Shown one piece after another: positions 21,991-54,810 of a stretch of 64,000 nt of DNA (its first letter is position 1; each line of letters begins with the position of its first letter). The stretch spans positions 6,200,001-6,264,000 of the forward strand of contig NC_047066.1 in assembly GCF_902459465.1 (NCBI RefSeq), given 5' to 3'. This stretch comes from Asterias rubens. Taxonomy: Eukaryota. The notes under the pieces were generated by a model, which searched no databases, had not been told where the DNA came from, and saw nothing but the letters and a program-made list of their open reading frames with translations. The position numbers were made by a program, and so were the translations under genes.

Positions 21991-24900
21991 TTAAGATCGT
22001 AAGAAGCTCCTTGCGTTAACGACTGCAGATTTGTCTCGGTACATGGAAATGAGTTCACGCCACTTGTCATGAACCTGAAGCAGAAACTGATTACCTACAA
22101 TAACAAAACAAATTAATGAACAAATAAAATAAATAAATACAATTAAGTAAACATAAAAATAGATTAATTATTTGTAAACTAGAGTTTGTTTAATATAGTT
22201 CGCGTTTTCGAGAAAGTGAGTTAAAGCGAAAAAATCTATACTTCCTATACAAATTAATGAATAAATAAAATCAATAAATACAAAAAAATATACATAAAAT
22301 ACATTAATTATTTAAAAACGAGAATTGTTTCAAAAATTGCATTTTCAAATAAGTGATTTAAATTGCAAGAATTTAATTACTTTTTGAATTGTCGTTATTG
22401 TACATACCTTTTACATCGAAAATGAAAAATGCTGTTATTTTAACTTTTTGCAAGCTTTCTATATCTAGATTCGTTTAATTATTTTTACTGTGTAATACTT
22501 TACTGTGTATAAATTTTGTCTGGTCCAGACTTGTTGTTCTTTCCAGCGCGTTGAGGCGGATTCTTTCTGCTATTGTTTTTGTGCTTTATAAATTTATCTT
22601 TATTGTTATTATTCATTAGACTTCCTTGCATAGGATGTAAATCTCTAAGGTCAATGGAAATAACCTGAACAGAGCATTTAACTCCATGCCTAACTTTTGG
22701 CCAATGATAGGTTCTCCTCTATACTCAGTGAGGCGCTGTTTGAGCTTGCGACTTCCATATGTTTGGCGCCAAACAATGTTAAACTTTGTTAAGCTTATGT
22801 TAGAAAATGTAATTTAAATAATAGTAATAATGATAGTTGTACTATCAATAGCTCTCCATTGCTTGTTACCAAGTAAGTTTTAAAGCATTGTCTTGGGTAA
22901 TTACCAATAGTGTGGCAAAGGACTTACCGATAATAATTAATCCTTTCTTGGCTCGTGTCAGGGCAACGTTGACCTGGTTATCATCCATGATAAAGCCAAG
23001 ATTGTGATGCATCCATCCAAGACTGGGTTTCTCCTCAATCTCAACCTTCGGCAAAGAGCGGACCAGCGACAGGATAACATAATCCCATTCCCTTCCTGGG
23101 AGATTAGATGGAATTAAGGAAAAATAAATTACTTTCCAGTTGTTACATCTGAATTTACAAAGTGATTAAAGACACCTTTGGTAATTGACACAGACCAGTC
23201 TTCTCACTTGGTGTATCACAACATGATGCATAACATAACAAATCTGTGAAAATTTGGACTCATTTGACCACCGAAATTGCAAGAGAATAATGGAAGTAAA
23301 AACACCCTTGTCACACAAAGTTGTGTGCTTTAAGATGCTTTGTTTTCGGGACCTCAAAATTTAATTCTGAATTCTAAATATTTTAGTGGAAAAATTACTT
23401 CTTTCTCGAAAACTATACGTTACTTCAGAGGGAGCCGTTTCTCACAATGTTTTATACTATCAATGACTTAAGAAGTTTTTACCAAATGTAAAGGAGATTT
23501 AATTTCGTCTAACTTTAAAGGGATACGTTGCCTTGGAACGGGCGAGTTGGTCTATGAAAATTGTTTGAAAACATTTGTTATAAAATGCATATATTTGAAA
23601 AGATGTTTTAAAAGTAGAATATAATGATCCACAAAAAAATGCCTTGTAATTGCATGGTTTTCCTTATACGTCGTGAACTAACATACTTCAAATTTTTTAC
23701 TCCACATAATGGCCGATTATGTTAGCTTGCAAAACAAAAGGAAAACCATGCAATTTCGAGGCATGTGTGTGGATCATTTGTTTTAAACATCTTTCTAACC
23801 ATATGCATTTCATACCAAACGGCTTCAAACACCTTCATAGACCAACTCGCCTGATCCAAGGCAACGTACGTGTCCCTTTAAGCATTTTAATTTTGAGCTT
23901 ATTGCAAATAAACTGGTAAGAAGTATGGCTGCTAAGATCGGAACTAACCTTGACTGGTGATAACAGTAGTCACTTTGATCTTCTTCAGATCACGTCGATC
24001 CAATGCCAGAGCGTCTCTGATTTCAGCACATTGCAGACGATACTGGGACAGAATGATGATGTTCTCCGGCTTGACGCCTTGATTGAGCAGGTTATTTGCA
24101 ATTCTCACCTAAACACAGCAAATAACACATTTGAAATTTGATAAATTCCCATCAAAATTTTTATTTTATTTTTTACTTTAGCATCACATTTAGGTTGATC
24201 ACATCATTTAATAAGGTTGGGGTACCATCAATACTTTTCAACTTCAATTCTAAATTATAAGTGCTCAATGGTTAAAAGCATAATGTAATTTATACGAACC
24301 ACTTGTTTGACTTCTTCTGGATTTGCTCTGGACATCTCATTCCCTTCTGCAGCCTTACAGGCAAGTATCTTTTCATGGCCGAACACATGACAGAACACAG
24401 CCCGGAAATTTTCACCACCAGGCAACTTCTTGAGGAGCTTCTGGTGTTCTGGCCGTCGCTGCTTCACAGAATTGGCAGTCTCCAGTTTGCTCTCGTAAAA
24501 GGTTTGCGAGGGGAATGCGCAGATGGATTCATGCTATGAAATCACACACACAAAAAAAAAAAATTATAATTACAACTACAGTTTCTCCATCAAGCCTAGA
24601 GAACCTAAAGGCCCGGTCACACACAGGCCTCGATAACGAGAACAACAACGAAAACATTAAAAATGCACGCCCTTGACTGGTTGAATTAGCGTGGGCGTAT
24701 TCTGCTTGGAGCAATTCAACCAATAGAATGCGTTCTCTCTGTGTCGTTATCGTTATCGCTTTAGTTATTGCTGCATAGTGACTCTGCCTTTAGAATTACA
24801 AGTTGTGGTCAGAGTGGAATGGAGTCCTAAACCTCCACCTACCTCCCGGGTTGTGCCACTGGACAGATGTTGCCATAAAAGGGTAAAGTTGGCCCACCTT

Positions 24901-39800: not shown

Positions 39801-42800
39801 AAAAAGGTAAAATGTAAGCCTAAAAAATTTGCACAGATTATTTTTTGTATATATCTACATTTATATAGGATTACACTGTTCGAACGGTTAAAAAACCCAA
39901 AGGTAAACTTTCCCTTTAAAGAAAAAAAAAAATCAAAAATCTTTGTTTTTAAATATTTGGTTCACTTAAGGCATTACTTTATTATTCAGTATATAGATTA
40001 TATTAAGAATCCATTCCATATTTAAATTAAAATTAAAATTTGGAGTGGGTGATTGGGTCAAAAATGTTTTACCATTTTTAACATCGACTGTTCTGAATGG
40101 CCCAGAACTATTGGAGGTTGGTGAAAAAATGTATGGATTATTAATTTTTTGTTTGACTTGTTCAAACTATTATTGTTCTAGAGGTAAAAACAGGTTAAAC
40201 AATTATTAATCTATAACAGGTTAAACAATTATTAATCTATAACATGTAAAACAATTATTATTCTAGTCGTAAAACCGTTATTATTCTAGAGGTAAAAACA
40301 ATAATTAGTATAGATGTAAAACAGTTATTATTTTAAAGGTACAACAGTTATTTTTCTAGAGGTAAACCAATTATTTTTCTAGAGGTTAAACAATTATTAT
40401 CGCAGAGGTAAAACAAATTATTCTCATAGATGTAAACCAGTTATTATTTTAAAGGTAAAACAATTATTATTCTAGAGGTAAAACAACAATTCTAAAATGT
40501 GGAATCAATATTCATCTAGATTTGTTCCAGTGATTGGTTTCCATCAACAACATTTGTTTAATTCCCTTTGTATAACAAAAAGGGGAATGGGTTGATTTGA
40601 AATGGAAAAAACACAAGAATTACAAAAAAAGTTAGAAAAATCCTACCTTGGACATTATCCACAGTGTCGACCGTCACATTGTGAAATCCTTCCTTCCTCA
40701 GATAAGCTCGTATTAGATGCACCTGCAAAACAAGTGATTTGAGTTAATTGATTGATTGAGTTTTTTATTTATTTATTTCCTCAAAACCTCCAAAACTGGA
40801 AAAGATAAAAAGATTTATAAAAATTAAATCAAATATACAGTATAAGGGACAGGTTGAACAAAATAAAAACATTTTAGTGGGATTTGTACCTGCATATACC
40901 CATGATTGGGTTTTATGGGGTCTCTACTTGACTAGCACTGCTTTGTGGAGACCCCAACAACTTAAAGGCACTGGACACCTTGAGAAACTGTCAAATTCTC
41001 ACCTTGTGTATCCCAAAAATGCAACGAAGTTGCAAGAGAAAAATGAAAGAAAAAACACCCTTGTTGCACAAATTTATGTGCTTTCAGATGGCTAATAAAA
41101 AGCTTCAGGGCTGAAGTCTTTTAGTATTTGAGTGAGAAATCAACCTTGATATAACAGTTTAGAATCAGACTGGTGAAAACTTTTGGTTGTTTTCCCCCAA
41201 AGAAACCTATAAATGACCTCGGTCAGTTATGATTGTTTGCAGCACTTGCGCCATCAATTCACCCCCCACCCATGGATTTCAAAGACCTGCTTGAACGAAA
41301 ATGTCAATTCGTGAATTTGCTGAATATTTCATTTCAAATGTTTTCAATGAATAAGGAAATATGATTATAAAAAGCGTTTAATTGTGTAAGCAAAAAAATT
41401 TGAATACCCTTATCCAGCATTTTTCTTGGAGATTTGCAAAAACTCAGTTACGTAATCACTTTCAAAGCGTCATAGTTGGGAGCTCCAATTTGTAAAGCAG
41501 CTTTGTTGCAGCGTGGAGGTATAACAAAGCAAACTCGAAGCATTGTCCTTTGAGGGGGGGGCCTGATTTTTTAATCGATAATTATAAAAAATTCAGAAGT
41601 GTACACATATAAAAAATTACATTAAAATGGTGAACAAGTGCATTATAAACAAAAGTTAAAATACCATATCCGTTAAAAACATTCCGCCCAAGTAGCTGTT
41701 TAATGTACTTTCAAAAAAATACACAACTGTTCTTGATGTTAAGTTAGCTTAACCTTCATACTTTTTTGCCCCCTCACTTCTCATTGAAACACAATTACTG
41801 GACTTGACATTGTGATAAAACGCATCATACCTGCATAATGTAAGCAGCCAAAACAGCAACATTTTCTTGGAAGTCTCCCCATTCTGCAGTAAGCCATCCT
41901 TCCATCAGCAGTTTCACTTGTCTTACTACTTCATGAGTCTAAATGGATGTAAAAAATACAGAACAAGGCTTTAAAGACACTGGACACCTTTGGTAATATT
42001 ATCAAAGACCAATCTTCTAACTTGGTGTATCTCAACATTATGCACATAATAACAAACCTGTAAAAATATGAGCTCAATTGGATGTTGATAATAATGGAAG
42101 TAAAAAACACCCTTGTCATACGAAGTTGTGTGCTTTCGGATGCTTGATTTCAAGACCTCACGTGCGAGGTCTCAAAATCAATTCAAATATTTTACTGAGA
42201 AATTACTTCTTTCTCAAAAACTATGTTACTTCAGAGGGAGCTGTTACTCACAATGTTTTATACTATCAACATCTCTCCATTGTTTGTCACCAAGTACGTT
42301 TTTATGCCACCAACTATTGTGAGTAATTACCAATAGTGTCCTGTGCCTTTAAATCACTTCATGTTGGATGATATTTTGGATGCAAACTTCTTTTGATTAG
42401 ACTTATGCGGACATTTTAAAAGTTTTCTCATTTTTATTAACAACCTGTGAGTCTATACTCAGGCAATTTGCAGGGTTTATCACAGACCCGGCATACTATT
42501 GCTGTGTGATGTACACAAACTGGTCTTTAGAATGATGCAAGCCTGGCGCATATACAGCCATGTTTATCTAGCCGATGATAACACATTTTACCTTGAATGC
42601 AGCAAAATGAAGTATACAAACCTCATAGTTGTTGGCATAGGACATTCCCGAGTGGTATTCAACTCCCTTCACTACACAAAACGTCATTGGCTTGACATGT
42701 GGATGCTCCAGGTGTCTTATCCCGGCCTTCAGATTCTGCTTGTAAAACGTCTTGGAGGTGAAATCCAGAATCGACTGGCAGGTTCGGTAGTTTGACGTCA

Positions 42801-45800
42801 GGAACTTCTGCTTGCATTTCTTCGTCAGCAACAAACGCTGCAATAGAGAACTGTCCAAACCCGCATCGCGAACTGCCTTTGAGTAAACCTAAAAGACATT
42901 TTAATAAAGTGAACAGCATGAATGCATGTGACATTTAAGCAAAGGCGTAGTTTTAGGAAAAGTGCTCTTGATCATTCCAGATATTTATCATGAAATTCAC
43001 GAAAGTAGAACATTGCAGTTTTAGTTGCCATTTTACTAAAAAGGCTGGAATAAGTCCCAAGGTTCAACTTGCAAATTTTGTTCAAAGGGAACTTTGGGAT
43101 TTCATTCTACCCTTCTGGAATACTTTAAAAGAAAATAAGAGCTACACTCTGTTAATATTTCTCAGAAAAGAGCGTTCATCACATACTTTTCTTTATCTAA
43201 CATTCAATGATTCTGATTGTAGAAGCACACAGAGATATTACAATAGTTTTTCTTGTTTTGTTTTAATCAATCTGTCTGTTTATTGTTCTAAAATTTGTAG
43301 TGTTTATAAATCAAGTGTGGGATAATAAAGTTCTTATGTTTTCTTCTTTGTTTTTAGTTTGGTATTTCCAGTGATGAAAACCAAACTTACCTTTGGACTC
43401 ATTTGCATATGATCACCGGTCAACACAACGCATGTATCTTTGGTTGCCAAGGTCAATGGTATCAAGACTTCAGCTTCAAGGACCTGGCCCGCCTCGTCAA
43501 TGAAGATATGAGAGAAGTTTCCATGAAGGCCAGCCGAGACAAGATGCGTTGCCGTGGTAAGTGTCGTCACAACAACTTGGGCTGCTAGGATTTCTGTTTT
43601 ATCCGGAAGACGAATGTTGCCGTTGGCATCCTTGGGGACATACTCAAGGACGGTAGGGTGGATGGATTTTTTGTTGCGCATCGTTGCGTAAATCCGGATC
43701 ATGCGGAATGTTCCATTGTCTCTAAGGTACAAGTCAGCAGCACTGCAAAAATAAGAAGAAAGTCAATCATGGCTTCATATTTATCATCAGATTTTCTACC
43801 CTACAAAACTCTTAATGAACTGCATTCTATTTTTGGGTTGAATAAATTATCAGAGCTCAAATTTCTTGCCAACAAACCAATAAGACTGCAACCTTTACTT
43901 TACCAAAAATATTTTTTACTCAAATTTCACACCCAACGCTCCAAATTACACTATGGTTGTACCCACAAGTTAACTGAACTTACTAGTTATTTTTTATCAG
44001 AATTATTTAAAAACTTAAAAACTCATACCTGTTTGAGTGTGTGCAGATTAGAATCTTACACGACGGTCGTGGTTTTAGGATTTTGTTCACCGCCATCGCC
44101 ATTGTTGAGGTCTTTCCTGTTCCAAAGGGCCCATACATCAGGACTGGTCCAACACCAGGCATCGGTGGCGCTTCGCTACCGCCATGTTTACTGATTAAAT
44201 CAATGACTTTTTGTTGATGTGCGTTGATTTTCTCATCAGTGCCTACACCTGATGAAGGGAATGGAGGTAGCCTGAAAATGTGAATCAAGAAAATGTTCAG
44301 TTCTGGTTATTAAAAAGCAATGCCAAAAAATCCTTGTGAAAAATATTTGTGAAAGTTTCTGAACAGAAACCGCTCCCTCTGAAGTGAGGTAGTTTTCGAG
44401 AAAGAAGTAATTTTCCACGAATTTGATTTTGAGACCTCAGATTTAGAATTTGAGGTCTCGAAATCTGAAAGCACACGACTTTGTGTAACAAGGGTGGGTT
44501 TTTTTTTCATTATTATCTCGCAACTTTGACGACCAATTGAGCTCAAATTTTCACAGGTTTGTTATGTAATGCATATGTTGAGATCCACTGAGCGAGAAAA
44601 CTGGTATTTGACAATTACCAATAGTGTCAAGTGTCTTTAACTAATAGAGATACATCATCATAAACTTACATCTGTGGCCCTTCTCCCTCTGGAAACACTA
44701 AATCCATGTTCTGCATCTCATCTATGCCAAAGTGCTTGACACAAAAATGTTCTCGATTGAGCTGAAATTTGAGCTTAACATTACGCTCCACTCCATCCTC
44801 AAGTTGTAGGTCTGCGATACACTCCTTACTCAGCTTGATGAGTAGCACCTCCTCCTCTTTATCCCCCAATGTCTGGTTGGGAAGTATGGGAGCTTCATAA
44901 TGTGCCAACTGTTTCAATAAAGAAAAAATGCATTATTTATACCTCATTGACACAAAATCACCAGCCAAATCACCATAATCACCAGCTAGTGATGATTAAT
45001 TTGGATAGTACGGTTCTCCTGTATATTTTTATTATGCTTGTGCAATTTGCCATTTTTATATTGTATTTTTTTCATTTTCTTTGTGATTTGGTTTACAATA
45101 GAGTATTTCGTTGTTTTATTCTGTTGTTTGTCTGTTATAGTTGTGCTGGTCCCTTGTCCCTTTTTAAAATTGTTATTATGTGTAAACAAGGGTCCCCATT
45201 TAGTGGGCCTGTGTGCCTGTTCAGGGCTTCCCTTTTGCACCAATATAATTTTGTATGTATTTGTGCAATGAAGGTAATAAAATTATGAAAATTAAAATGA
45301 AGACCTAGATAGCTCAAACAGTGGAGCGTCGGTGTGGCAGGAGATTCTGTCCCTCCAGATTCTGTCCCCCCGTATGGCGAAGTGTGCAAACTTCTTCTGA
45401 GAACACACTCTTGTCATCCTCCTTCAGCCTATGTTAATTTCCCATCAAATGGGGAACAGAATCTCCGACGGACAGATTTCCCTGGGACACCAGCACATTA
45501 ATCCGGAGGTATAATTAGTTTTTGGCTCAGGTTTACATACAACTTTGATTTCCTAACAAACCTTATCAGAGTCGGTAAACTCGAGTAGCACACTCTGGAC
45601 ACTCTTGATGAAGATCTGACTAGCCATTGTGTCATCTATGAGAGACTCTTTGAGACTGACTGAAGCAAAAAAATATCCATCTTGAGCATATTCTGTACGG
45701 ACGCCCGGCAGCGCAGCCTGCAATGAAACCTTCAGTGTACCTGATGTTGCGAACCTTCAAGGAGAAAGGGAAAAGGTATTAGTAAATATTCTAGAAAAGT

Positions 45801-48800
45801 AGGAACAAAATTTTGTACTTTTTAGAAAGGTAAATAGAAAATGTTAACTTCAGTTTCCTTTACTTGGTGTTGTGAACCTTCAAGGAGAAAGGGAAAAGGT
45901 TAGTTAGAAAATATTTTAGAAAAGTAGAATTTGTTTAAGTGTTCTTTCTTGAAATGTAAATATGCTAACTTCAGGGTTTTTTCAACTTTAGACATGACTA
46001 TTATTATGCCAAATTCTTGATATTTTGCCATTTGTTTAATTATTGTTATAACTTGTTTTTTGGGACAAACTAACCGAGCAATCTTCTTGTTGCACTCATT
46101 TTCTTCCCGATAAAGAGCATCATGCATGACTTGTTTGTAGTTTTCCCGACTGAGTGGCTCTAAGCGGCCATGATCACTGCTGAGCGAAACCGGTACTTTG
46201 TACTTCTCCAGTAATTCCTCCTCAATAAGTGTTGGTTTATTGGTCTTTGATTCGTCAGTAAACTTGACAACTGTGCAGTTGGGTTTCATGGATATTTCGT
46301 CTTGTGTTGTTGGTGTTTGCAGTGCTTGGGAACCAACTTCAACCTGTTGTGAAAAACAAAAAGAATTCCCTGATTCTTGTTAAAAAGTTTGCGAACAATA
46401 CAAACAATGTCAATAGGGAGCTGAATTAGGTTTAAACATTGATCAAATGGATTCAGAAATTCTAAATTTTTAAAAGTATGCAGTAAAACAATTAAGAAGA
46501 AACGAAAAGCCATTGCAACGAAATCAAGTAGGCCTATAATTAAAGGATTTTGTTACCTTTTGTTTATCAAGTTTTTGGCCATGACATTCATCTCTACCCA
46601 CTGTGAATGGAGTGTAATATATAATTTACTTGTAGAAATTTCAGCTTCAAGTTTTTGAGGAAAAAAAAGGTGAAAATCACAGAGCAGTGTTTTAAGGAGA
46701 GTTGCGTAAATACGTTGCACATGCTAAACAATAAATTTTGACATTGTTTTACTCATTTCTCAAAAACTCAGCACCTCAGCAAGTAAAATTTCAAGTGAAG
46801 TTTCTACCATCATAATCTTCAAACTGCGTAAGATTTAATGTAAATCTGCGGGGGAAAAAGTACCCACACACTTTAAACAAACTTACCATTATTTCCCGGA
46901 CTACCATCGGCCTGCTACCAAAATCAAACGCCACCAACTGCTTGAAGGAGCCCATGCTACTCGACTCAAATGCAACACTGACACAATATCTTGGGCTGGC
47001 AGCAACATCATCATCCCGAACTTCAAGAAAAACGCCAGGGCACTCCTGTAGTTTAGCTCCACTCTCCAAAGGGTTGAGTAGGTGGAAATACTTCCGGTGA
47101 TCATCACGAAGCAGGTAAACTTTCCTCAGAGGATTCTTACGAGTAAAACAAAGTAAGAAAAAAACACCAGAAATTTAGTTTGGGTTTATGTTTAAATTGC
47201 ATTGTAGTTTTATTTCACACAATAGTGGCGAGGACAAGTTTCTTATGTGAAGTGAATCCCAAAGTGATTTGCCTGTGGATTTTTGTTTACAGAACTTGTG
47301 GAAGTACTGAGTATACAGTGCTTAATACAAATCGGTGTAAGGGGAAAAAAAATACTATTCTTTATCCGCAGTGCAAAAAAATAACATCTATTAAAACAAC
47401 AAAAACTTTGTCAGGTTGTTTCTTTATCCGTTTGTTTATCAGTTATTACATAGAGGGAATTTTAGTTAATTTCAAGTTAATGATGGCCTGACGTTTCAGA
47501 ATTTTAGTTAAACAGAAATTACCTTCTCTGTTGCTGTGATGTTAAATTTAAATGACTCCTTTGATTTCTCTGTTCCTTCCAAGACTTTAGTCAAATTTTC
47601 ATCAGAGCATTCCATGGTGACTCCTGTGGGAAGCGATGTAGTCATCTGAAAAACAAACGGGAAAATCTTAATCACAATACCCTTCTCAAGAAACATCAAG
47701 CCAAGGTGTTATATGCACACCTTAAATAGTCAAATTTAAGACTTTTTAAGAACCTTTAAAGGGTTTGGGTATTTCTTGTAAAACACAAAACTCAAAAGTA
47801 CACAGACTTACAGATAAACTTAAGATAATGATGGTAGAAAGCTTCCCTTTAAATATAAAACTTGCTGAGGTGCTGTTGATTTTGAGAAATGAATAAAACA
47901 ATTTTCTGGTTAACTGCGTCATCGCATGAGCAACTTTTTTTTGGGTAACTGGCACAAATATTTGAGGAAGTTTCAACACAGAGTACTCTATGTTGCAACT
48001 TCCTCATAAAGCATCGAGCACGACCACGACCACGACCCGGACGGTTTTAAACGGCCGCTTAAGACCTCGTCGCCTGATCTTTTATTCCCTAATTTTGAGC
48101 ACAATGGGTATTATATAATTTGATAGAATTATTTATGAAGTTGCTGTGTCAAAATTGACCTGAATATTTAGATTTAAATTTTGAATGGCTATTTTTATAG
48201 TTGAAAATTGCCAGTTAAGTGGTAGTTAATTATAAAAAGTAAAATAAATAAATAAATAAATTATTATCAGGATTGTGATTTATCTTAACAATTTAGCATG
48301 TTACATGTGTTTTGTGAATGGTCCATGGCATATATGCAAAAATAAATTATGAGTTTTTTTATTTTTAAACGACATCATTTGCCAAAATTCATCAGAGAAG
48401 ACAGTTTCACAGTACAAGTAGTTCAAACAATTACTGCATAAAAACCTACCACATTTTGTCCAGCATTTTGCCATTCCAGAAGATCACCCTCAGTGAGAGG
48501 ATACAATTCCTGCTCCTTGGCCATTCTTCTCTTCATCATACGGTATTCGCATCTCTCCTTCCATTCCGCTAACTCCTCTCGGCTGTGTGCGTCGGTGCAA
48601 CTAGACTCACCCAAGAGGCAAGTTCCTCCCTCCACTCTGTTGTATGACAGAACATTATTCATTAGGAAACATAAGCATCTTTTTCATAAGTAATTTTCCA
48701 CGAATTTGATTTCGAGACCTCAGATTTAAAATTTGAGGTCTCAAAATCAAGCATCTGAAGCACACAACTTCATGTGACAAGGGTGTGTTTTCTCTCATAG

Positions 48801-51800
48801 TTATCTCGCAACATTGACGACCAATTGAGCTCAAATTTTCACAGGTTCAATATTTTATGCATATGTTGAGATACACCAAGTGAAAAGACTGGTCTTTGAC
48901 AATTACCAATAGTGTCCCAGCCAATTTTCTATACCTTCCGCCTGGTTAGTAGTTAAAAAGCAGGAAAGTTCTTTTCAGAACTGAGAAGTCTCCCAAACTC
49001 CGTGGTAGTAGAATAAAGACATGCAGTTCTCTAAGAACAAACTCTACCTGGCAAGTAGATACACACATGGTGTTACCACAAACCAAATATATATTGATAC
49101 CTCACCATGCAATGCCTCGCATCCTAAATATTGTTATTGTTATAAATAATGTTTTAGCCTTCGAGAGAGACGATCGGGTTTAAAACGTCAGGCCACTAAC
49201 CAGTTTTTTAAATTAATACCATAGATCCTTCTGATAGATTTTCTCATTTTTATAAATACTTACAATGCTTTGCATTGCTTAATAAAGCTTCCATTGAGCA
49301 CATTTAGCGGAAGTTCTCTGTATTTCCAGTCCTCCGCTTTCTCCTTGTCAGAGTCCACATTGGACCTGTGCTCCATCGTCTGCAAATGTTGGCGAAGATT
49401 CCCTCGATGGGGAAATTGCTCTTGGCAGTAATGGCAGTAGTAGGCAGAGGGCGACTTGCTCGCTGATAGGACTTCATCCAATGTTCTGACTGTTTGAAAC
49501 AAAAATGCAAAAACAAGCGATTGTATCGAATTAACACATTTTGTCCATCAATGATAAAATGCTTTATTACACAGGGCGAACTGTTTGTTTCTACCCGCAC
49601 GATACATATGCTGCCCCAGTGCAGATGAAGCAACAAGCTTAGGAAAGATGTGCATTAGTGCATTCATGTTGGACAACTTATGTTTTCCCGGGGCAAATTG
49701 TTTTTACATCGCTTTGTTTGACAGTCCTCTTTATGCACAAATATTGTTTGGGTTTACAGTTAGCCAATAGGGGTGTAGTAGGACAACATTCAGCCAATCC
49801 CAAAGATGAATTTAGACAGTTCCTAAGATTCAGGTCTTGGAGACTGCGTTATTATTTTGTGTATATAAGACTCAGACTTGGGCTAAAAAGACTAACTGTT
49901 CAGGATGGAAATAAATGTAGCATTGCATTGAATTTATTGCATGGAAAAGAAACAAGTAAATTAAGGCCCAGTCACACAGGCCTCGATAACAAGAATGAAA
50001 ACGAGAACGTTAAGAATGCACAACCTAAATTGGTTGAATAAGCTTGGGCATATTCTGCGTGGGCGAATTCAACCAATAGAATGCGTTCTCTTTGCGTCGT
50101 TATAGTTGTTGTTTTCGATATTGCTGCAGTGTGACTCGGCCTTTATACTTATATTGCAAAGAGAAGAGGGTTTTGCCCCATTGTTTCTGACAGTCAAAAA
50201 CATTTCTTTGAAGTTTTTCTTTTAAATAATCGCTTTGAGACACCCGGAAAGCGCTATACATAAAAAGAGAGACCTGAAAATACCACTTCTCGCTGGAATC
50301 ACTTACATCGGTTTTTGGCCATGTAAATCCAAAGTTCAATTTCCTCCAAATGATGTGGGTATGTACATGAATCTGCTTGCCTACATTCATCTCCGTATTT
50401 GCACAAGGTTGGAGTTGTCATTGGGTTGAGCGAAGGGGGGCGTGGTCGAACCTGGCACCATGATTGTTTACTCTCATAGTACGAGACCATTTGATTGGAT
50501 GTACTCTGACTGCCGTCACAGTTGACATACTGCAGAGTTTGCAGCAGTTTTGGAACAGTGGAGATATCAGGATGACAGTTTGTTGTGCAACATAACTGGG
50601 CGATTTTAAATGAATTGACGTTGTGCTCAACTTGGTACTGCCAAACTTTCAGCTCAACCTGTTGGAAGCAAGGACAATCAATTACTAGAGACATTTAAGT
50701 TTTCTTTTTCGATGGTAACAGCCAACCACTTCGAAAATAGAGAGATGGCTGGGATTTTCTCGTTTGTCTAGAAAGTAATGGAAGCCGCTGAAAACTTCTG
50801 AGCTGGGAGAGCATCAAAATATGTGCTTCATTCGAGGAATATATTTAATATTATTATTATTACAAAGATTTATTGAGCGCTTCCCAAGTAGACCAATGCA
50901 CTTTACTATAAAAACTACATGCAAAGTACAAGAAACCAGAATATACAAAAGCACAAAAACTAAGAAAAACGTACGTATAAAACATTTAAAAGCAATTGAC
51001 AGAAACAACATTCTTAAAACAACAGTACAGAAAAATTTCAGTTTGTTTCCAGCCAGGATTTTTATTTATTTTTTTTAATCAAAATATTGATCAATCGAGT
51101 CACCCCTTTACCTTGTTATGAGCCCGTCTGCAGGAGTTCCCTTGTATGCATCCAGACTGCTTGTCCATATTCGGACAAAGTTTCAGCGACTTCTTCAAAG
51201 TATTCCGAGGCAGTTGTCTGATCTTCAGGTACCTAATCTTTCCCTCCTTCATGTCCAGAATGTGGCCCAACACCTTGTTAGGCTCCCACGGATGTTCTAG
51301 CGGCGAACTGCAATGTGGGCCGATGGGAGACTTGACACTCGTGATTGGTGGGGAGCTGTCGTGACACTTCTCGCACAGCTGTGTGAAGTGTCCTCCCGCT
51401 TCTGACTTCAACCTCTTGAAGGCTTCTTTGACTGAACCACTGATCGGCAACCTGTGGTTTGTCTTTCCATTGTTTCTATACAAAAAGAACAAATGTGGTT
51501 ATACTTTGTATTTACTTATTATTTATTATTAGTTGTTTTATATGAATTTTGGTTTTACCCATACACATGGATGTGTGTTTATAGCACTGTGTGTACCGAG
51601 TACTTTTCCAAAGCTCTTAGAAAAAAATCACAGGCTTGTGGGATTCGAACCCATGCAGGATCTTTACATCTAGAGCAGTGTTTAACCAATTAGACCACCA
51701 AGAGGCAGTTCGAATCCTTACTGGTTGAAGTTGTGAAATCCAAAGAATTACTGGACCCTTGCGTGACGGCACAGCGCACTTACACTTAACTTTCCTGGGC

Positions 51801-54315
51801 TCGATTTCACAAGGCAAAATAAATCCATCATAAGAGAAATTGTCAGTATCACCATAGTGATTTGTATTGTGATATCACACTTTACTAAACAGCTACGATT
51901 GATTTGCAGTTACTATCAATCTTTAATATTTGTGAAAACGACCCCTGCCCCCACTTGGGGAGTAAAAATGTTGACCAAGGAATTCAGGCACAGGAATGGT
52001 GGGAACTGGTGCAAATAGTAGAACTCACTTTTTGAGGCGAAGAGAGTTGAACAGGGAATAGAAACTTATCGGTTTGCACAAAAGGGTGACCCAGTGGATT
52101 ATAATGCATGATATTTTCATGTTCAAAAACAAAAAGCTATTCGAGGAGATTTTGTTAAATTAAAAAATCAAAATAATAATTTGAAAAAAATGGTGAGCTA
52201 AAATTTTTTTTTTAAAACGCACCTCATTTCGTTTTTCTTGGGCCCTTGTCTGGTCTGACCAGATGTTGGCAGAGTCCAGGGGGAACTTTCCGATGCTGCT
52301 TCGTGCTGATTCCTGAAACTCTTATTTGGAGACCGTTTGGGCGATTTGACAGACGTAGATTTTGGTCCACCGTTGACGCTTGGAGATGATTTTAGAGGTT
52401 CAGGTCCTCTGTTGTCCTTTTGAGATGATGGGAGTGGTTTAGGCCTCCCGGTGTTGCTGGGAGATGATTGAAGAGATTTAGGTGTCCCACTCTTGTTGGA
52501 AGACCAGTTACTAGAAGGTTTAGGCCTCCCTCTGTCGTTGAGAGGTGAGTGAGAAGATATGGGTCCTCCGTTGTCGTTTGGAGATGATTGTAGAGTTTTA
52601 GGTCTCCCACTCTTGTTGGAAGATGAGTTGTTGGAAGATGAGTTACTAATAGGTTTAGGCCTCCCTCTGTCGTTGAGAGGTGAGTGAGAAGATTTGGGTC
52701 CTCCGTTGTCGTTTGGAGATGATTGTAGAGTTTTAGGTCTCCCACTCTTGTTGGAAGATGAGTTACTAATAGGTTTAGGCCTCTCATTGTTGTCGGGAGG
52801 CGAGTGAGGAGGGTTAGGTCCTCCGTCGTTGTAGGGAAATGACCGAAGAGGTTTAGGTCCTCCCTTGTCACAAGATTCTCCTTCACTCATGTCCGGCAAA
52901 ACAGTGTAAGAGTTATGTGATGTAAAGGATTGTTGGTGTACATCTGTAAGTAAAAAATTTCAGTAAAGTCAATATTTTTCCCCAAACAATTTCTTTCACC
53001 TCGTGAGCATTCCCATCAACATTGCAAAATGGCCTTTTTTGTACAACTACGTCCTGGAATTTCCTAGAAGGGTTTTCAAATGAAAATCTGTCCAAATTTG
53101 TTCAACAGACAATGCACAAGGCCTATCTGGCAATAAAAAAAACCTCTGTAAAATAAAAAAGAAGAACGAGAACAAAATGCATATTATGTTGTTTACTTGG
53201 ACATTTCAAATGGAACATTTTGTATGGAGGACTCAGGAGTAATGCTTATGTGAACTTGGTAATCAGTGAGCAACGTTCTTTCTTAACAATACCGGAGTCC
53301 TCTGGCCAAATGCTACCGAAGACCAGTTAAAGTTAATAAACCACAGAAGTAACCAAAAGAGTAATTTTTAGAGTTATTTTGGATTGAACCATTTTTTTTT
53401 ACTTGAAGTGAACCTGAACCTGATACCTCCGGGGCAATCTTGCCCTAATTTTTTTTGCCATCACACTTTCTTTTTCCGACCTCTTTAAACAAATTATTAT
53501 GAGACTCTTAGATCTAACTCTGTTATTATTTAGATGGATACAAATCACTTACTCATTCCACTACGCAATGGAGAAATGCTGGATGACTCAGGAGGCTGAA
53601 AACCAATATACAGAAAAGAGTAAAACAAATGGGCACTTCAACAATCTAAATGTTACTAAATTAGTGTCAAGCAATCATTTTTTGTTTATTTTGACCCCCC
53701 CCCCAAAGAAAGCAAAATAATAGTAATAATAATATTTGACTTGTGTCTATCAGTAACACCAGCTAGAATATCTTCTGATCCTGTCTCCATCATGGAAACA
53801 TTTACTGAATTTTTAACTGGATTCAATGTCAGGAAACACAGAGAAATCTCAGAAGTACAAAATGCTAGTAAAAAAGCACAAAAAATAATAAAAATCACAA
53901 AGATAATATTAAAACTATTTACAAATAAATAGATGTATATTAACATTTAATTTGTTTTGAATACTTAACCACACGGGGCTGAATGGGTAAATTAAAATTG
54001 TTTGAATATTGTTTTAACAACTAGTGTTGGGCAGTGGCAAAGCTAGATATCAGCAATACCTGTTATGATGCTTTGTTCTTGTAAGGGCAGGGCAGTTTTT
54101 TTAATAAACAAAAAGAACTTTATGAAAGAAACTCAATTTTTGCAATTGTAATAAATGATGTAAGGGGCACTAAAAAAGCAACTATGAGGCCAAGAATGTT
54201 TCAAGGGGCACCAATGCAATGACAAGGGGCATGGAGGCAACTGCCTCTGTCGCCTCCATTAAAATCATTGACATACCTCATTATCTTTCTTGGATGACGA
54301 CTGGCTATGTGCCAT
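21991..54315 (-). CDS. HELZ2: HELZ2-like RNA helicase/3'-5' exoribonuclease (Zn fingers + UPF1-like helicase + RNB + UPF1-like helicase), 29 coding exons, about 3586 aa
   Basis: Exons (minus): 54315-54277, 53595-53553, 52943-52223, 51475-51112, 50658-50307, 49489-49264, 48636-48450, 47645-47523, 47135-46887, 46343-46075, 45754-45562, 44908-44670, 44271-44029, 43742-43391, 42888-42622, 41938-41831, 40722-40647, 39660-39410, 38698-33861, 32068-31980, 30733-30596, 28894-28751, 28481-28198, 26807-26611, 25707-25605, 24533-24300, 24108-23949, 23095-22928, 22094-21991. All GT..AG with compatible phases, summing to 10761 nt. Motifs: helicase 1 GPFGTGKT/DEAGQ/GDHMQ/NVQGKQF/NTAFTRAQ; RNB TVDNPETQDLDDALS and FTSPIRRYIDIVVHR; helicase 2 GPPGTGKT/DEAGM/GDHKQL/QYRMH/SQGREWD/NVALTRAK. 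The start ATG has strong Kozak context (AAGATGG) and an in-frame upstream TGA. The two small N-terminal exons are the least certain. Confidence 0.92.
23166..23465. mobile_element. Family A MITE copy, right end truncated
   Basis: Left TIR and core are present. Confidence 0.75.
23515..23881. mobile_element. Family D MITE (TTAAAGGGATACGTTGCCTTGG TIR)
   Basis: Inverted termini; homologous copy at 62147-62535. Confidence 0.8.
25221..25532. mobile_element. Family A MITE copy with internal deletions
   Basis: Both TIRs recognisable. Confidence 0.8.
26545..26586. repeat. (ATT)n microsatellite
   Basis: About 14 perfect trinucleotide units just downstream of a HELZ2 donor site. Confidence 0.95.
29746..30115. 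mobile_element. Family B MITE
   Basis: TTAAAGCCATTGGAC ... CCAATGGCTTTAA. Confidence 0.82.
30112..30557. mobile_element. Family C MITE (TTAAAGGGTTTGGGTACTTTTTGT TIR)
   Basis: Shares its left TTAA with the preceding family B copy. Related copies at about 46541-46876 and 47756-47910. Confidence 0.8.
30769..30811. repeat. (ATTT)n microsatellite
   Basis: About 10 tetranucleotide units. Confidence 0.92.
33056..33250. repeat. Imperfect duplication, about 128-bp period
   Basis: ATTCAAGGAGTATTCA...TTCACTGTGTCCTTG...CACAGCTG...TTACTGTTT x2. Confidence 0.75.
33452..33823. mobile_element. Family A MITE copy (inverted relative to 6854)
   Basis: TIRs and core; ends about 37 nt from the donor of the giant HELZ2 exon. 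Confidence 0.8.
33861..38698 (-). CDS. HELZ2: HELZ2 giant exon (4838 nt): PAM2, acidic linker, ESIAKV repeats, cold-shock domains, RNB exoribonuclease domain
   Basis: Matches the 1596-aa ORF 33857..38647. Acceptor ccaaacag|GGA at 38698, donor AG|GTGAGT at 33861. RNase II-family catalytic D-x5-D-x-D-D at 36292-36263. Confidence 0.95.
37283..38359 (-). repeat. Coding higher-order tandem repeat (12 ESIAKV-headed units; 78+102 nt dimer = 180 nt period)
   Basis: Units ESIAKVTIQKKPSDGDVGDHGQGDGP and ESIAKVAIQKKGENEDVGQLQGDMDVGRQGPDGL alternate in three near-identical dimers, then diverge. Confidence 0.95.
40168..40486. repeat. Degenerate minisatellite, about 22-bp unit (TTATTATTCTAGAGGTAAAACAA)
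   Basis: About 14 imperfect copies in a HELZ2 intron. Confidence 0.85.
41971..42352. mobile_element. Family A MITE copy
   Basis: Both TIRs and TTAA flanks; about 30 nt from the acceptor of exon 41938-41831. Confidence 0.82.
44366..44640. mobile_element. Family A MITE, partial
   Basis: Core plus one TIR ending in TTAA. Confidence 0.75.
45333..45489. mobile_element. 157-bp TGT...ACA TIR element (Ginger-like, non-autonomous) inside a tRNA-derived SINE head
   Basis: About 38-nt imperfect TIRs; 4-nt flanks TCGG/CCAG. Confidence 0.6.
48450..51475 (-). other. Zinc-finger cluster of HELZ2 (three CCCH + one C2H2/matrin-type), spread over 4 exons
   Basis: CPNMDKQSGCIQGNSCRRAH (C-x8-C-x5-C-x3-H); CKYGDECRQADSCTYPH; CHYCQEQFPHRGNLRQHLQTMEH; CKAL|VEGGTCLLGESSCTDAH (spans a splice junction). 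Confidence 0.85.
48686..48920. mobile_element. Family A MITE, partial
   Basis: Core plus one TIR. Confidence 0.75.
52350..52865 (-). repeat. Coding tandem repeat, about 13 units of 13-14 aa (G[GR]PKxxxSxxxxx), trimeric about 120-nt higher-order period
   Basis: For example GRPKTLQSSPNDN / GGPKSSHSPLNDR / GRPKPISNSSSNKS, repeated in the HELZ2 N-terminal exon. Confidence 0.9.
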
Positions 54316-54496
54316 CTTGGTGGATGTGGAGTGATGAACACTGAACAGCTTAAATTTTAGTGTAGTCTTTCAAATCTGGCAAAAACATTAACAAGAAAAA
54401 AGTTCTTATCACTAAAGTTGCAAATGATGTGTACATATAAAAAGCATTATAAAATAATGAAAGCCCATTTTCTTTTAAAAGGCCACACCTCACATT

Positions 54497-54810
54497 TTAA
54501 AGGCACTTTTGGTAACGAGTAATGGAGAGCTGTTGATAGTGTAAAACATTGTGAGAAAACGGCTCTCTCTGAAGTAACATTTTAAGAAAGAAGTAATTTC
54601 TCACTTAAATGTTTGATTTGAATTCAAGGCATCTGAAAGCACACAACTTGTACGACAAGGTTGGTTTTTTCTTCCACTATTCTCTCGCAACTTTGACAAC
54701 CATTTGAGTCCAAATCTTCACAGGTTTATTATTTTATGCATATGTTGAGATACACCAAGTGAGAATACTGGTCTTTGACAACATTACCAAAGTTGTCCGG
54801 TGCCTCTAAA
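54497..54810. mobile_element. Family A MITE copy, degenerate
   Basis: Degenerate TIRs and core. Confidence 0.75.

What the first reader, a model, noticed from the sequence alone, without database searches (positions are those of the whole stretch)
21991..54315. Apparently fully active HELZ2-type dual-helicase/exoribonuclease in an invertebrate deuterostome
Seen: both helicases keep Walker A (GPFGTGKT, GPPGTGKT) and Walker B (DEAG). The RNB keeps all four RNase II catalytic aspartates (DNPETQDLDD) and FTSPIRRY, and four Zn fingers lie N-terminal. Known: vertebrate HELZ2 is an interferon-induced RNB exoribonuclease, and invertebrates lack interferon. Inference: this is an RNA-unwinding/degrading module, possibly antiviral, extended by lineage-specific linkers. 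It starts at a canonical AUG with an in-frame upstream stop, whereas human HELZ2 is reported to use a non-AUG start.
Basis: partly seen in the sequence, partly recalled or inferred. Interest (0 to 1): 0.7.

Follow-up and report, generated by a model that had tools for sequence, protein, structure and literature searches.

The report
Intact expressed HELZ2-family RNA-decay gene
This is an intact, transcribed gene for a 3,585-residue HELZ2-type enzyme (four zinc fingers, then two helicases flanking an RNase II-type nuclease) in an invertebrate deuterostome; the family is already known from invertebrates, so the gene itself is ordinary, and its most interesting detail is a conserved PABP-binding-like motif.

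Summary
The gene lies on the minus strand, with ATG at 54315-54313 and the stop at 21993-21991. I could model 29 GT-AG exons giving one open frame of 3585 aa.

- **Transcription:** spliced contigs from three independent studies confirm exon 1 with the in-frame upstream TGA, a 43-nt microexon, and exons 3-6.
- **Domains:** three CCCH and one C2H2 zinc fingers, UPF1-like helicase 1, OB_HELZ2 + RNB, and UPF1-like helicase 2. These are collinear with vertebrate and hemichordate HELZ2.
- **Catalytic motifs:** all are present, namely four Asp plus SPIRR in the RNB and motifs I-VI in both helicases.
- **Phylogeny and fold:** the RNB domain falls inside a 100%-supported HELZ2 clade. The predicted fold matches DIS3L2.
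- **Paralogues:** the genome holds three more full-length copies.

The claimed novelty is overstated. HELZ2 was already reported in corals and molluscs. An oyster Helz2 is induced by a herpesvirus. The non-AUG start is specific to Hominidae.

The more interesting features:
- A PAM2-like motif (LNPKATPFKP) sits about 60 residues after helicase 1. It is conserved in invertebrate HELZ2s and absent from 19 vertebrate sequences.
- The ESIAKV repeats are shared with an orthologue.
- Coding polymorphism in the N-terminal exons is nearly neutral.

An antiviral role is untested. The scan has notes on this window only.

The parts
21991..54315 (-). Whole CDS of the HELZ2-like gene: 29 exons, 10758 nt, 3585 aa. 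Exons (high-low): 54315-54277; 53595-53553; 52943-52223; 51475-51112; 50658-50307; 49489-49264; 48636-48450; 47645-47523; 47135-46887; 46343-46075; 45754-45562; 44908-44670; 44271-44029; 43742-43391; 42888-42622; 41938-41831; 40722-40647; 39660-39410; 38698-33861; 32068-31980; 30733-30596; 28894-28751; 28481-28198; 26807-26611; 25707-25605; 24533-24303; 24108-23949; 23095-22928; 22094-21991.
   Evidence: All introns are GT-AG and there is no internal stop. The order is collinear with a HELZ2 profile and with three paralogues that share the exon boundaries.
54277..54375 (-). Exon 1 as seen in transcripts: 5'UTR with the in-frame TGA (54372-54370) and the ATG (54315-54313), encoding MAHSQSSSKKDNE.
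   Evidence: A spliced contig of run X10 covers 54277-54375 and joins it to 52943 through 43 unplaced letters. Sequence and stop.
53553..53595 (-). 43-nt microexon (PPESSSISPLRSGM plus 1 nt) that keeps the frame between exon 1 and exon 3.
   Evidence: It is the only 43-nt AG..GT open candidate with good splice sites. It lies in the only intronic bin with contig depth in X7, X9 and X10. It matches the 43 unplaced letters in the contig.
52223..52943 (-). Exon 3: Ser/Pro/Asn/Gly-rich repeat linker (about 13-aa units; 135-nt higher-order repeat at 52493-52764). It is absent from the three paralogues.
   Evidence: repeats; covered by contigs; no paralogue match for aa 28-267; no Pfam family.
48585..51177 (-). 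Zinc-finger region: CCCH 51177-51118, CCCH 50403-50353, C2H2 49436-49368, and a CCCH split across exons 6/7 at 49274-48585.
   Evidence: Exon junctions 4/5/6 are confirmed by 4194-nt spliced contigs in X9 and X10.
39410..44271 (-). Helicase 1 (UPF1-like SF1), exons 13-18. Motif I GPFGTGKT 44132-44109, motif II DEAGQ 43498-43484, motif III GDHMQMSP, motif V NVQGKQFR, motif VI AFTRAQS 39541-39521.
   Evidence: Pfam AAA_11 and AAA_12 pieces match in order. Motif columns are identical to HELZ2 helicase 1 of 13 relatives.
38618..38647 (-). PAM2-like motif LNPKATPFKP, 61 residues after helicase-1 motif VI.
   Evidence: conserved position in invertebrate HELZ2s; 0.002 expected per shuffled protein. 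(weak support for docking on the PABPC MLLE domain).
37280..38359 (-). ESIAKV repeat linker (180-nt unit x 4.3 at 37590-38356, plus degenerate copies) inside the 4.8-kb exon 19.
   Evidence: TRF, 94% matches; translation; the same repeats in orthologue P0001.
34721..37123 (-). Nuclease module OB_HELZ2/CSD - CSD2 - RNB - S1-like. Catalytic DNPETQDLDD at 36292-36263 and FTSPIRRY at 35323-35300.
   Evidence: Pfam. PDB sequence search puts DIS3L2 first at 1.6e-44. Invariant columns D278, D286, D287 and SPIRR. AlphaFold2 pLDDT 86.6. Foldseek to mouse DIS3L2 4pmw gives E=1e-36 and TM 0.76.
21994..30733 (-). Helicase 2 (UPF1-like SF1), exons 21-29. Motif I GPPG|TGKT 30605-28881 (split by an intron), motif II DEAGM 26708-26694, motif III GDHKQLRP, motif IV QYRMH, motif V SQGREWDYVILS, motif VI ALTRAKK 22964-22944.
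   Evidence: Pfam AAA_11/AAA_12 pieces. Motif columns as in HELZ2 helicase 2. The intron position is shared by the paralogues.

Best explanation
The region is one intact, transcribed protein-coding gene on the minus strand. It is one of four paralogues of the HELZ2 family in this ambulacrarian (probably echinoderm) genome.

The 3585-aa product has, in order:
- an N-terminal low-complexity repeat;
- three CCCH fingers and one C2H2 zinc finger;
- a UPF1-like SF1 helicase;
- a PAM2-like peptide and an acidic ESIAKV-repeat linker;
- a DIS3L2-like nuclease module (cold-shock/OB folds, RNB, S1-like);
- a second UPF1-like helicase.

The most likely mechanism follows what was shown for human HELZ2. 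The zinc fingers and OB folds hold RNA. The two ATP-driven helicases strip duplex or protein from it. The freed 3' end is threaded into the RNB channel and hydrolysed 3'-to-5' by the Mg2+ site built from the conserved aspartates.

The PAM2-like motif probably tethers the enzyme to poly(A)-binding protein, and so to polyadenylated RNAs.

Shown here: gene structure, transcription of the 5' third, domain order, conservation of the catalytic residues, clade membership and fold.

Inferred: enzymatic activity, PABP binding, and a role in restricting viral or retroelement RNA (about 40%) rather than general RNA turnover.
For: - **Gene structure:** a continuous 29-exon ORF with GT-AG introns.
- **Transcription:** spliced contigs from three studies join exons 1-(2)-3 and 3-4-5-6. 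A 4194-nt contig runs from the exon-3 repeat to about 372 nt into exon 19. That length matches the modelled 2557 nt of exons 7-18 and an end at the ESIAKV repeat.
- **Domains:** Pfam RNB 1.5e-68 and OB_HELZ2 1.2e-15. AAA_11 and AAA_12 pieces match in order for both helicases, and zf-C2H2 matches.
- **Collinearity:** the order follows Ptychodera, fish and bird HELZ2.
- **Motifs:** columns are identical to the family signature in both helicases and in the RNB.
- **Phylogeny:** in the RNB tree the HELZ2 clade has 100 SH-aLRT, is separate from DIS3/DIS3L2, and has the window nested in an ambulacrarian subclade.
- **Fold:** the AlphaFold2 model has pLDDT 86.6 and superposes on DIS3L2 over about 770 columns.
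- **Paralogues:** all keep the same architecture and catalytic motifs.
- **PAM2:** the motif keeps its position across invertebrate HELZ2s.
- **Mechanism:** human HELZ2 biochemistry is in PMC10516660.
Against: - No biochemical data exist for this protein.
- Exons 7-29 have no direct read evidence here, because the single read-laying run went on the 5' end.
- A few junctions have close alternatives: 44908/44872, 42622/42592, 24303/24300 and 28894/28888.
- In the N-terminal exons, differences between RNA contigs and the reference are 19 nonsynonymous to 4 synonymous. That part therefore looks weakly constrained.
- No ISRE-type enrichment was found near the 5' end, and no expression data under infection are available.
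- PAM2-MLLE docking got only weak support. The score was 0.44 against 0.00 for the best control. That mark was reached by 51 of 78 solved complexes and 2 of 108 mismatched pairs. At 0.60 or under, however, it was reached by only 5 of the 78 solved complexes and by all 4 mismatches that passed. The pass may also come from the model's memory of solved MLLE-PAM2 complexes.
Confidence: 0.87

Rival explanations
1. The gene is a constitutive RNA-surveillance or mRNA-turnover enzyme, or a retroelement-control enzyme, recruited through PABP. It is not an inducible antiviral effector, so the antiviral part of the first reader's reading would be wrong.
For: - A conserved PAM2-like motif points to poly(A)/PABP-bound RNAs in general.
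- Transcripts are present in contig sets from at least three studies, none chosen for any known challenge.
- No ISRE-like enrichment was found.
- Human HELZ2 also restricts LINE-1 (bioRxiv 10.1101/2022.03.26.485892, listed).
Against: - Oyster Helz2 rises 24 h after OsHV-1 infection.
- Vertebrate HELZ2 is interferon-induced.
- Four paralogues and a polymorphic N-terminus fit an arms-race gene family.
Confidence: 0.35
2. The locus is a transcribed but functionally decaying paralogue, redundant with the three copies on contig C6. Its intact motifs would merely reflect recent loss of constraint.
For: - N:S = 19:4 among contig-versus-reference differences in exons 3-6.
- Two long repeat insertions are absent from the paralogues.
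Against: - The 3585-codon frame has no stop across 29 exons.
- Every family-invariant catalytic column is kept.
- An orthologue in another species (P0001) is 52% identical over 1395 aa, is itself an open frame, and keeps the same ESIAKV linker. The lineage is therefore old and maintained.
- The polymorphic part is the poorly conserved N-terminus only.
Confidence: 0.06
3. The 32-kb model merges two or more neighbouring genes, for example a zinc-finger helicase gene and a separate RNB-helicase gene.
For:
- The gene callers behind the database hits report the big exon as a stand-alone ORF.
Against: - A single 4194-nt spliced contig runs from exon 3 into exon 19.
- A cDNA-like contig of the paralogue-A type (P0002) joins RNB to helicase 2 in one ORF.
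- Exon phases are continuous.
- The order is the defining HELZ2 architecture in annotated full-length proteins.
Confidence: 0.03

Closest known systems
Human/vertebrate HELZ2 (3'-5' exoribonuclease HELZ2; Huntzinger et al. 2023, PMC10516660)
   Same: - The domain order is the same: CCCH and C2H2 zinc fingers, UPF1-like helicase, OB_HELZ2 + RNB + S1-like, then a second UPF1-like helicase.
- The helicase and RNB motif signatures match.
- The RNB clade is the same.
   Different: - Identity is only 25-27% in the nuclease part.
- It has four fingers rather than the six reported for human.
- All four RNB aspartates are kept. Human has Asn at the second, but other vertebrates keep Asp.
- It has an AUG start, as do all but the Hominidae.
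- It carries two repeat linkers and a PAM2-like motif not found in 19 vertebrate sequences.
Ptychodera flava 'HELZ2-like' (P0006) and unnamed ambulacrarian ORFs P0001-P0011
   Same: - They fall in the same ambulacrarian subclade (97-100 support).
- The PAM2 motif sits at the same place; P0006 has the canonical LNPQAAEFIP.
- P0001 shares the ESIAKV repeats.
   Different: Identity to the named hemichordate protein is 33%. The N-terminal S/P/N repeat exon is specific to this copy.
DIS3L2 (RNase II/RNB family)
   Same: It is the best solved-structure match by sequence (1.6e-44) and by fold (TM 0.76 over about 770 columns). It shares the CSD-CSD-RNB-S1 layout and the catalytic DxxxxxDxDD and SPIRR motifs.
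   Different: DIS3L2 has no helicases or zinc fingers, and it sits in a separate clade in the tree.
HELZ (helicase with zinc finger)
   Same: It has a CCCH finger plus a UPF1-like helicase. From my own knowledge (Hanet et al. 2019), not tested here, it also has a PAM2 motif that binds PABPC1.
   Different: HELZ has one helicase and no RNB nuclease. In HELZ the PAM2 lies in a long C-terminal tail.

Membership tests
HELZ2 | N-terminal zinc fingers of two types (CCCH and C2H2/dsRNA-binding type) | tested here: met
   Three CCCH patterns and one C2H2 (Pfam zf-C2H2 9.8e-5, zf-C2H2_jaz 0.0064), collinear with profile positions 15-140 of vertebrate HELZ2.
HELZ2 | Two UPF1-like SF1 helicase cores, one on each side of the nuclease | tested here: met
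   AAA_11/AAA_12 pieces match in order for both cores. Motifs I-VI are identical to the HELZ2-specific signatures.
HELZ2 | OB_HELZ2 domain (PF25049) followed by RNB | tested here: met
   PF25049 E=1.2e-15 and PF00773 E=1.5e-68 in exon 19.
HELZ2 | RNB domain groups with HELZ2 rather than DIS3, DIS3L1/2 or RNase R | tested here: met
   The HELZ2 clade of 37 rows has 100 SH-aLRT on a branch of 0.92, with the window inside it (quick IQ-TREE, 53 rows). HELZ, UPF1 and MOV10 helicase trees were not built.
HELZ2 | 3'-5' exoribonuclease activity aided by ATP-dependent unwinding | not testable with these tools
   Only sequence and predicted fold are available.
HELZ2 | Induction by interferon or viral infection | not tested
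   Run identities are coded and only contigs were available. The ISRE-like motif is not enriched.
RNase II / RNB exoribonucleases | Four catalytic aspartates (DxxxxxDxDD) and the SPIRR arginine motif | tested here: met
   DNPETQDLDD and FTSPIRRY are present. These columns are invariant or at least 90% conserved in 45 relatives.
RNase II / RNB exoribonucleases | CSD1-CSD2-RNB-S1 fold | tested here: met
   The AF2 model has pLDDT 86.6 and pTM 0.86. Foldseek top hits are DIS3L2, Rrp44 and RNase R over about 720-820 columns.
PAM2 (PABP MLLE-binding motif) | Consensus xxLNxxAxEFxP with key residues Leu3, Ala7, Phe10 and Pro12 | tested here: inconclusive
   LNPKATPFKP keeps L, N, A, F and P but has Pro in place of Glu9. 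Relatives carry the canonical form (LNPQAAEFIP, LNINAFEFVP) at the same position. The consensus itself is recalled from the literature.
PAM2 (PABP MLLE-binding motif) | Binds the MLLE domain of PABPC | tested here: inconclusive
   Complex prediction gave weak support. The score was 0.44 against 0.00 for the best of 3 controls. Contacts agree in at least 84%, and the partner's pLDDT is at least 53. The mark was reached by 51/78 solved and 2/108 mismatched pairs. At 0.60 or under, it was reached by only 5 of the 78 solved and by all 4 passing mismatches.

The most novel reading that the evidence does not exclude
Invertebrate HELZ2 enzymes may be ancestrally tethered to poly(A)-binding protein. 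The tether would be a PAM2 motif placed about 55-61 residues after helicase 1, a feature lost in vertebrates.

If so, the family began as a helicase-driven nuclease aimed at polyadenylated RNAs: viral, retroelement or cellular. This lineage then expanded it to four catalytically intact paralogues. The copy in this window added an acidic ESIAKV repeat and a fast-varying N-terminus. That would amount to an interferon-independent RNA-restriction arm.
Probability: 0.3. Interest if true: 0.55.

Novelty: new member of a known kind. Interest (0 to 1): 0.3.

Why it matters
The gene adds a well-supported, full-length, transcribed echinoderm-type HELZ2 to a family whose biochemistry is known only from human. 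It shows that all catalytic residues, including the aspartate that human HELZ2 lacks, are ancestral.

It also offers a way to ask what HELZ2 does in an animal without interferon. This lineage has four intact paralogues. Invertebrate members carry a conserved PABP-binding-like motif that I did not find mentioned in any paper.

As a plain gene identification, however, it is expected. It is likely already named 'HELZ2-like' by automatic annotation, as in Ptychodera and Saccostrea.

Tried and rejected
- **ISRE-type motif** GAAANNGAAAS: 3 matches in the window against 2.74 expected. This gives no hint of IRF-type control.
- **Rfam** at gathering threshold over the whole window: no hit. The hammerhead-like motif noted in intron 19 is therefore not supported at that level. 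The more permissive E-value mode was not run.
- **Other long ORFs in the window:** Pfam finds nothing meaningful.
- **Alternative start:** the Met at 52890 inside exon 3 was considered as the start. It was rejected because spliced contigs join exon 3 upstream to exon 1 in frame.
- **Alternative junctions:** 44872, 42592 and 28888 were rejected on paralogue exon boundaries and motif integrity. They were not checked with reads.
- **Annotated protein:** the search for this genome's own annotated protein failed by design. A product of about 3585 aa exceeds 1.75 times the longest referable ORF.
- **Literature:** a search for HELZ2 in echinoderms found no paper. For HELZ2 with PAM2 the only hit has one mention of each word and HELZ2 in neither title nor abstract; I did not read it.
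- **MLLE domains for docking:** the MLLE exon of the genome's own PABPC lacks the second half of helix 5, and the single-exon MLLE on C20 is divergent. I used a database fragment 99% identical over the exon instead (P0122).
- **Technical failures:** (tool busy; wrong frame).
Full report

The window is G000:C5:6200001-6264000 of a 417.6-Mb assembly.
- GPFGTGKT at 44132-44109;
- DEAG at 43498-43487;
- DNPETQDLDD at 36292-36263;
- FTSPIRRY at 35323-35300;
- a second DEAG at 26708-26697.

The second Walker A is not contiguous in the DNA. Only GTGKT is found at 28895-28881. The GPP and the first base of the Gly codon come from an exon ending at 30596.

A single 4.8-kb open frame at 38647-33857 holds Pfam RNB (E=1.5e-68), OB_HELZ2 (1.2e-15) and a weak CSD2 match.

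**Gene model**

I built a profile from 13 full-length HELZ2 proteins. It matches 25 open segments of the minus strand in strictly collinear order, from profile position 15 to 2534. tblastn with hemichordate, fish and bird HELZ2 gives the same order.

Choosing GT-AG junctions that keep the frame gives 29 exons, 10,758 nt and 3585 codons. There is no internal stop. The ATG is at 54315-54313 and the stop at 21993-21991.

The ATG has A at -3 and G at +4. An in-frame TGA lies 18 codons upstream.

**Transcript evidence**

Twelve public runs hold the big exon. I laid the contigs of four runs from four studies on 48600-54599. Spliced pieces appear in three of them, so those runs contain cDNA.
- One 4194-nt contig, seen in both X9 and X10, joins 52545-52223, 51475-51110, 50656-50307 and 49489-49264.
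- Shorter contigs cover the rest of exon 3.
- One contig joins 52943 to 54277-54375 with 43 letters in between.

The only open 43-nt AG..GT candidate with good splice signals is 53595-53553. It lies in the only intronic bin that has depth in those three runs. With it, the frame runs from the ATG at 54315 into exon 3.

The 4194-nt contig continues 2929 nt downstream of exon 6. Exons 7-18 as modelled sum to 2557 nt. The contig should therefore end about 372 nt into exon 19, near 38327. That is where the ESIAKV tandem repeat begins (38356) and where a de Bruijn contig would be expected to break. This is indirect support for the middle of the model, including the 123-nt exon 8.

Exons 19-29 were not checked with reads. 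They rest on three things:
- homology;
- exon boundaries shared with the paralogues;
- a cDNA-like database contig of a paralogue type that joins RNB to helicase 2.

**What the protein is**

In order along the protein:
- **aa 28-267:** a Ser/Pro/Asn/Gly-rich repeat.
- **aa 368-599:** three CCCH fingers and one C2H2 finger (Pfam zf-C2H2 9.8e-5).
- **Helicase 1:** motifs GPFGTGKT, DEAGQ, GDHMQMSP, NVQGKQFR and AFTRAQS.
- **aa 1452-1461:** a PAM2-like LNPKATPFKP.
- **Linker:** an acidic stretch, then ESIAKV repeats up to aa 1907.
- **Nuclease module:** OB/CSD, RNB and S1-like domains.
- **Helicase 2:** motifs GPPGTGKT, DEAGM, GDHKQLRP, QYRMH, SQGREWDYVILS and ALTRAKK.

Aligned with 13 full-length relatives, each motif carries the signature of the corresponding HELZ2 helicase. 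The two cores are therefore positional orthologues of HELZ2 helicases 1 and 2.

In a 45-sequence alignment of the nuclease module, the first, third and fourth aspartates and SPIRR are invariant. The second aspartate is at least 90% conserved. The window's protein has all of them.

AlphaFold2 on that alignment gives pLDDT 86.6 and pTM 0.86. Foldseek places the model on DIS3L2 (mouse 4pmw, E=1e-36, TM 0.76 over 774 columns), followed by Rrp44 and RNase R. No HELZ2 structure is in the PDB copy by sequence; DIS3L2 is the best at 1.6e-44.

**Family placement**

I built a maximum-likelihood tree of the nuclease module with 53 rows and RNase R as the outgroup. It recovers a HELZ2 clade with 100 SH-aLRT on a long branch. 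The clade holds vertebrate HELZ2, the oyster and Ptychodera 'HELZ2-like' proteins and the window's protein. It is separate from DIS3 and DIS3L2.

The window's protein pairs with P0001, an ORF from another assembly (57% identity in the tree columns). The pair sits inside an ambulacrarian subclade to which Ptychodera is sister.

The genome has three further copies on contig C6, two of them in tandem about 40 kb apart. All have the full zinc-finger, helicase, RNB, helicase order, the same exon boundaries and intact catalytic motifs. None has either repeat linker.

**How it most likely works**

Human HELZ2 is a 3'-5' exoribonuclease. Its helicases allow it to degrade structured RNA, and mutating the third Asp kills the nuclease (PMC10516660). 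Every residue and domain needed for that mechanism is present here, so the same mechanism is the best inference. It is not shown.

**What is known already**

- The same paper states that HELZ2 occurs in invertebrates such as corals and molluscs and is absent from insects.
- It states that the non-AUG start is a Hominidae peculiarity.
- It states that the canonical second Asp is found in monotremes and other vertebrates.
- A 2026 preprint reports that oyster Helz2 is up-regulated 24 h after OsHV-1 infection.
- Databases already name Ptychodera and Saccostrea proteins 'HELZ2-like'.

An invertebrate HELZ2 with a complete active site and an AUG start is therefore what one would expect. I found no paper on echinoderm HELZ2.

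**The more interesting details**

*PAM2-like motif.* Another note on this window had flagged it. I found it at the same place, 55-61 residues after helicase-1 motif VI, in several relatives:
- paralogues A and B;
- P0003, P0004 and P0008;
- Ptychodera (the canonical LNPQAAEFIP);
- a more distant invertebrate group (LNINAFEFVP).

No motif was found in 19 vertebrate HELZ2 sequences or the oyster fragment, even with a loosened pattern. The chance expectation is 0.002 per shuffled protein.

I docked the 40-residue stretch on a PABPC MLLE domain 99% identical to this genome's own exon. The result was weak support:
- score 0.44 against 0.00 for the best of three controls;
- contacts agreeing in at least 84%;
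- partner pLDDT at least 53.

That mark was reached by 51 of 78 solved complexes and 2 of 108 mismatched pairs. At 0.60 or under it was reached by only 5 of those 78 and by all 4 mismatches that passed. Because MLLE-PAM2 complexes are solved, the pass may reflect likeness only.

*ESIAKV repeats.* They are shared with orthologue P0001, so this linker is maintained and is not a recent slip.

*N-terminal polymorphism.* Of 23 single-base differences between RNA contigs and the reference in exons 3-6, 19 change the amino acid. That is close to the neutral proportion. The N-terminal part looks weakly constrained or diversifying. The sample is small and comes from contigs only.

**Verdict**

The gene is a new member of a known kind. 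The antiviral reading remains an inference. No ISRE-type signal was seen.

Noticed in passing
window 38618-38647 (-); also L-loci of G000:C6 paralogues and proteins P0003, P0004, P0006, P0008, P0028, P0029, P0033: A PAM2-like motif (LNxxAxxFxP) sits at a fixed distance after helicase 1 in invertebrate HELZ2 proteins. It was not found in 19 vertebrate HELZ2 sequences. The only paper holding both words mentions each once and was not read.
   Followed up: partly
window 49264-52943 (-), exons 3-6: Differences between the RNA contigs of three runs and the reference are 19 nonsynonymous to 4 synonymous. The N-terminal third looks nearly unconstrained or diversifying within the species.
   Followed up: partly
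G000:C6:22109000-22132100 (+), 22147800-22174200 (+), 356100-382000 (-): Three further full-length HELZ2-like genes are present, two of them in tandem. They share the exon structure and keep intact RNB and helicase motifs, but lack both repeat linkers.
   Followed up: partly
window 37280-38359 (-) and protein P0001: The ESIAKV(A/T)IQKK repeat linker is also present in the orthologue from another assembly (ENA ERZ26222911). It is therefore conserved, not assembly noise.
   Followed up: yes
window 48600-49200, 50000-50200, 51800-52000, 54400-54600: Intronic and 5'-flanking stretches have contig depths thousands of times above the exons, with many chimeric joints. The stretches 48785-48902 and 54664-54781 are 86% identical direct copies. 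These are probably highly transcribed interspersed repeats. The 5'UTR may run into one of them.
   Followed up: no
window 32431-32472 (intron 19): Another note on this window flagged a hammerhead-like motif here. It gets no Rfam match at gathering threshold.
   Followed up: partly
G000:C17:7380420-7381175 (-): At least five partial MLLE-like units (profile positions 27-66) form a tandem array with a 159-bp period. This is an unusual repeated MLLE-type coding array.
   Followed up: no
G000:C35:138527-138706, 223180-223359, 226298-226477: Three copies of the PABPC MLLE exon with identical match statistics (E-value, bit score, 82-aa open frame) lie on one contig, one of them inverted. This is either a recent duplication or an assembly redundancy.
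   Followed up: no
L013 (NCBI GCA_014845345.1, JACSEG010001168.1, 5131 bp): An intron-less ORF of 1515 aa, close to paralogue A (nearly zero branch lengths in the tree), spans OB, RNB and the start of helicase 2. It is either a cDNA-like contig in a genome assembly or a retrocopy.
   Followed up: no
window 40189-40486: An AT-rich 23-nt tandem repeat (about 12.5 copies, with a 116-nt higher order) lies in intron 17.
   Followed up: no
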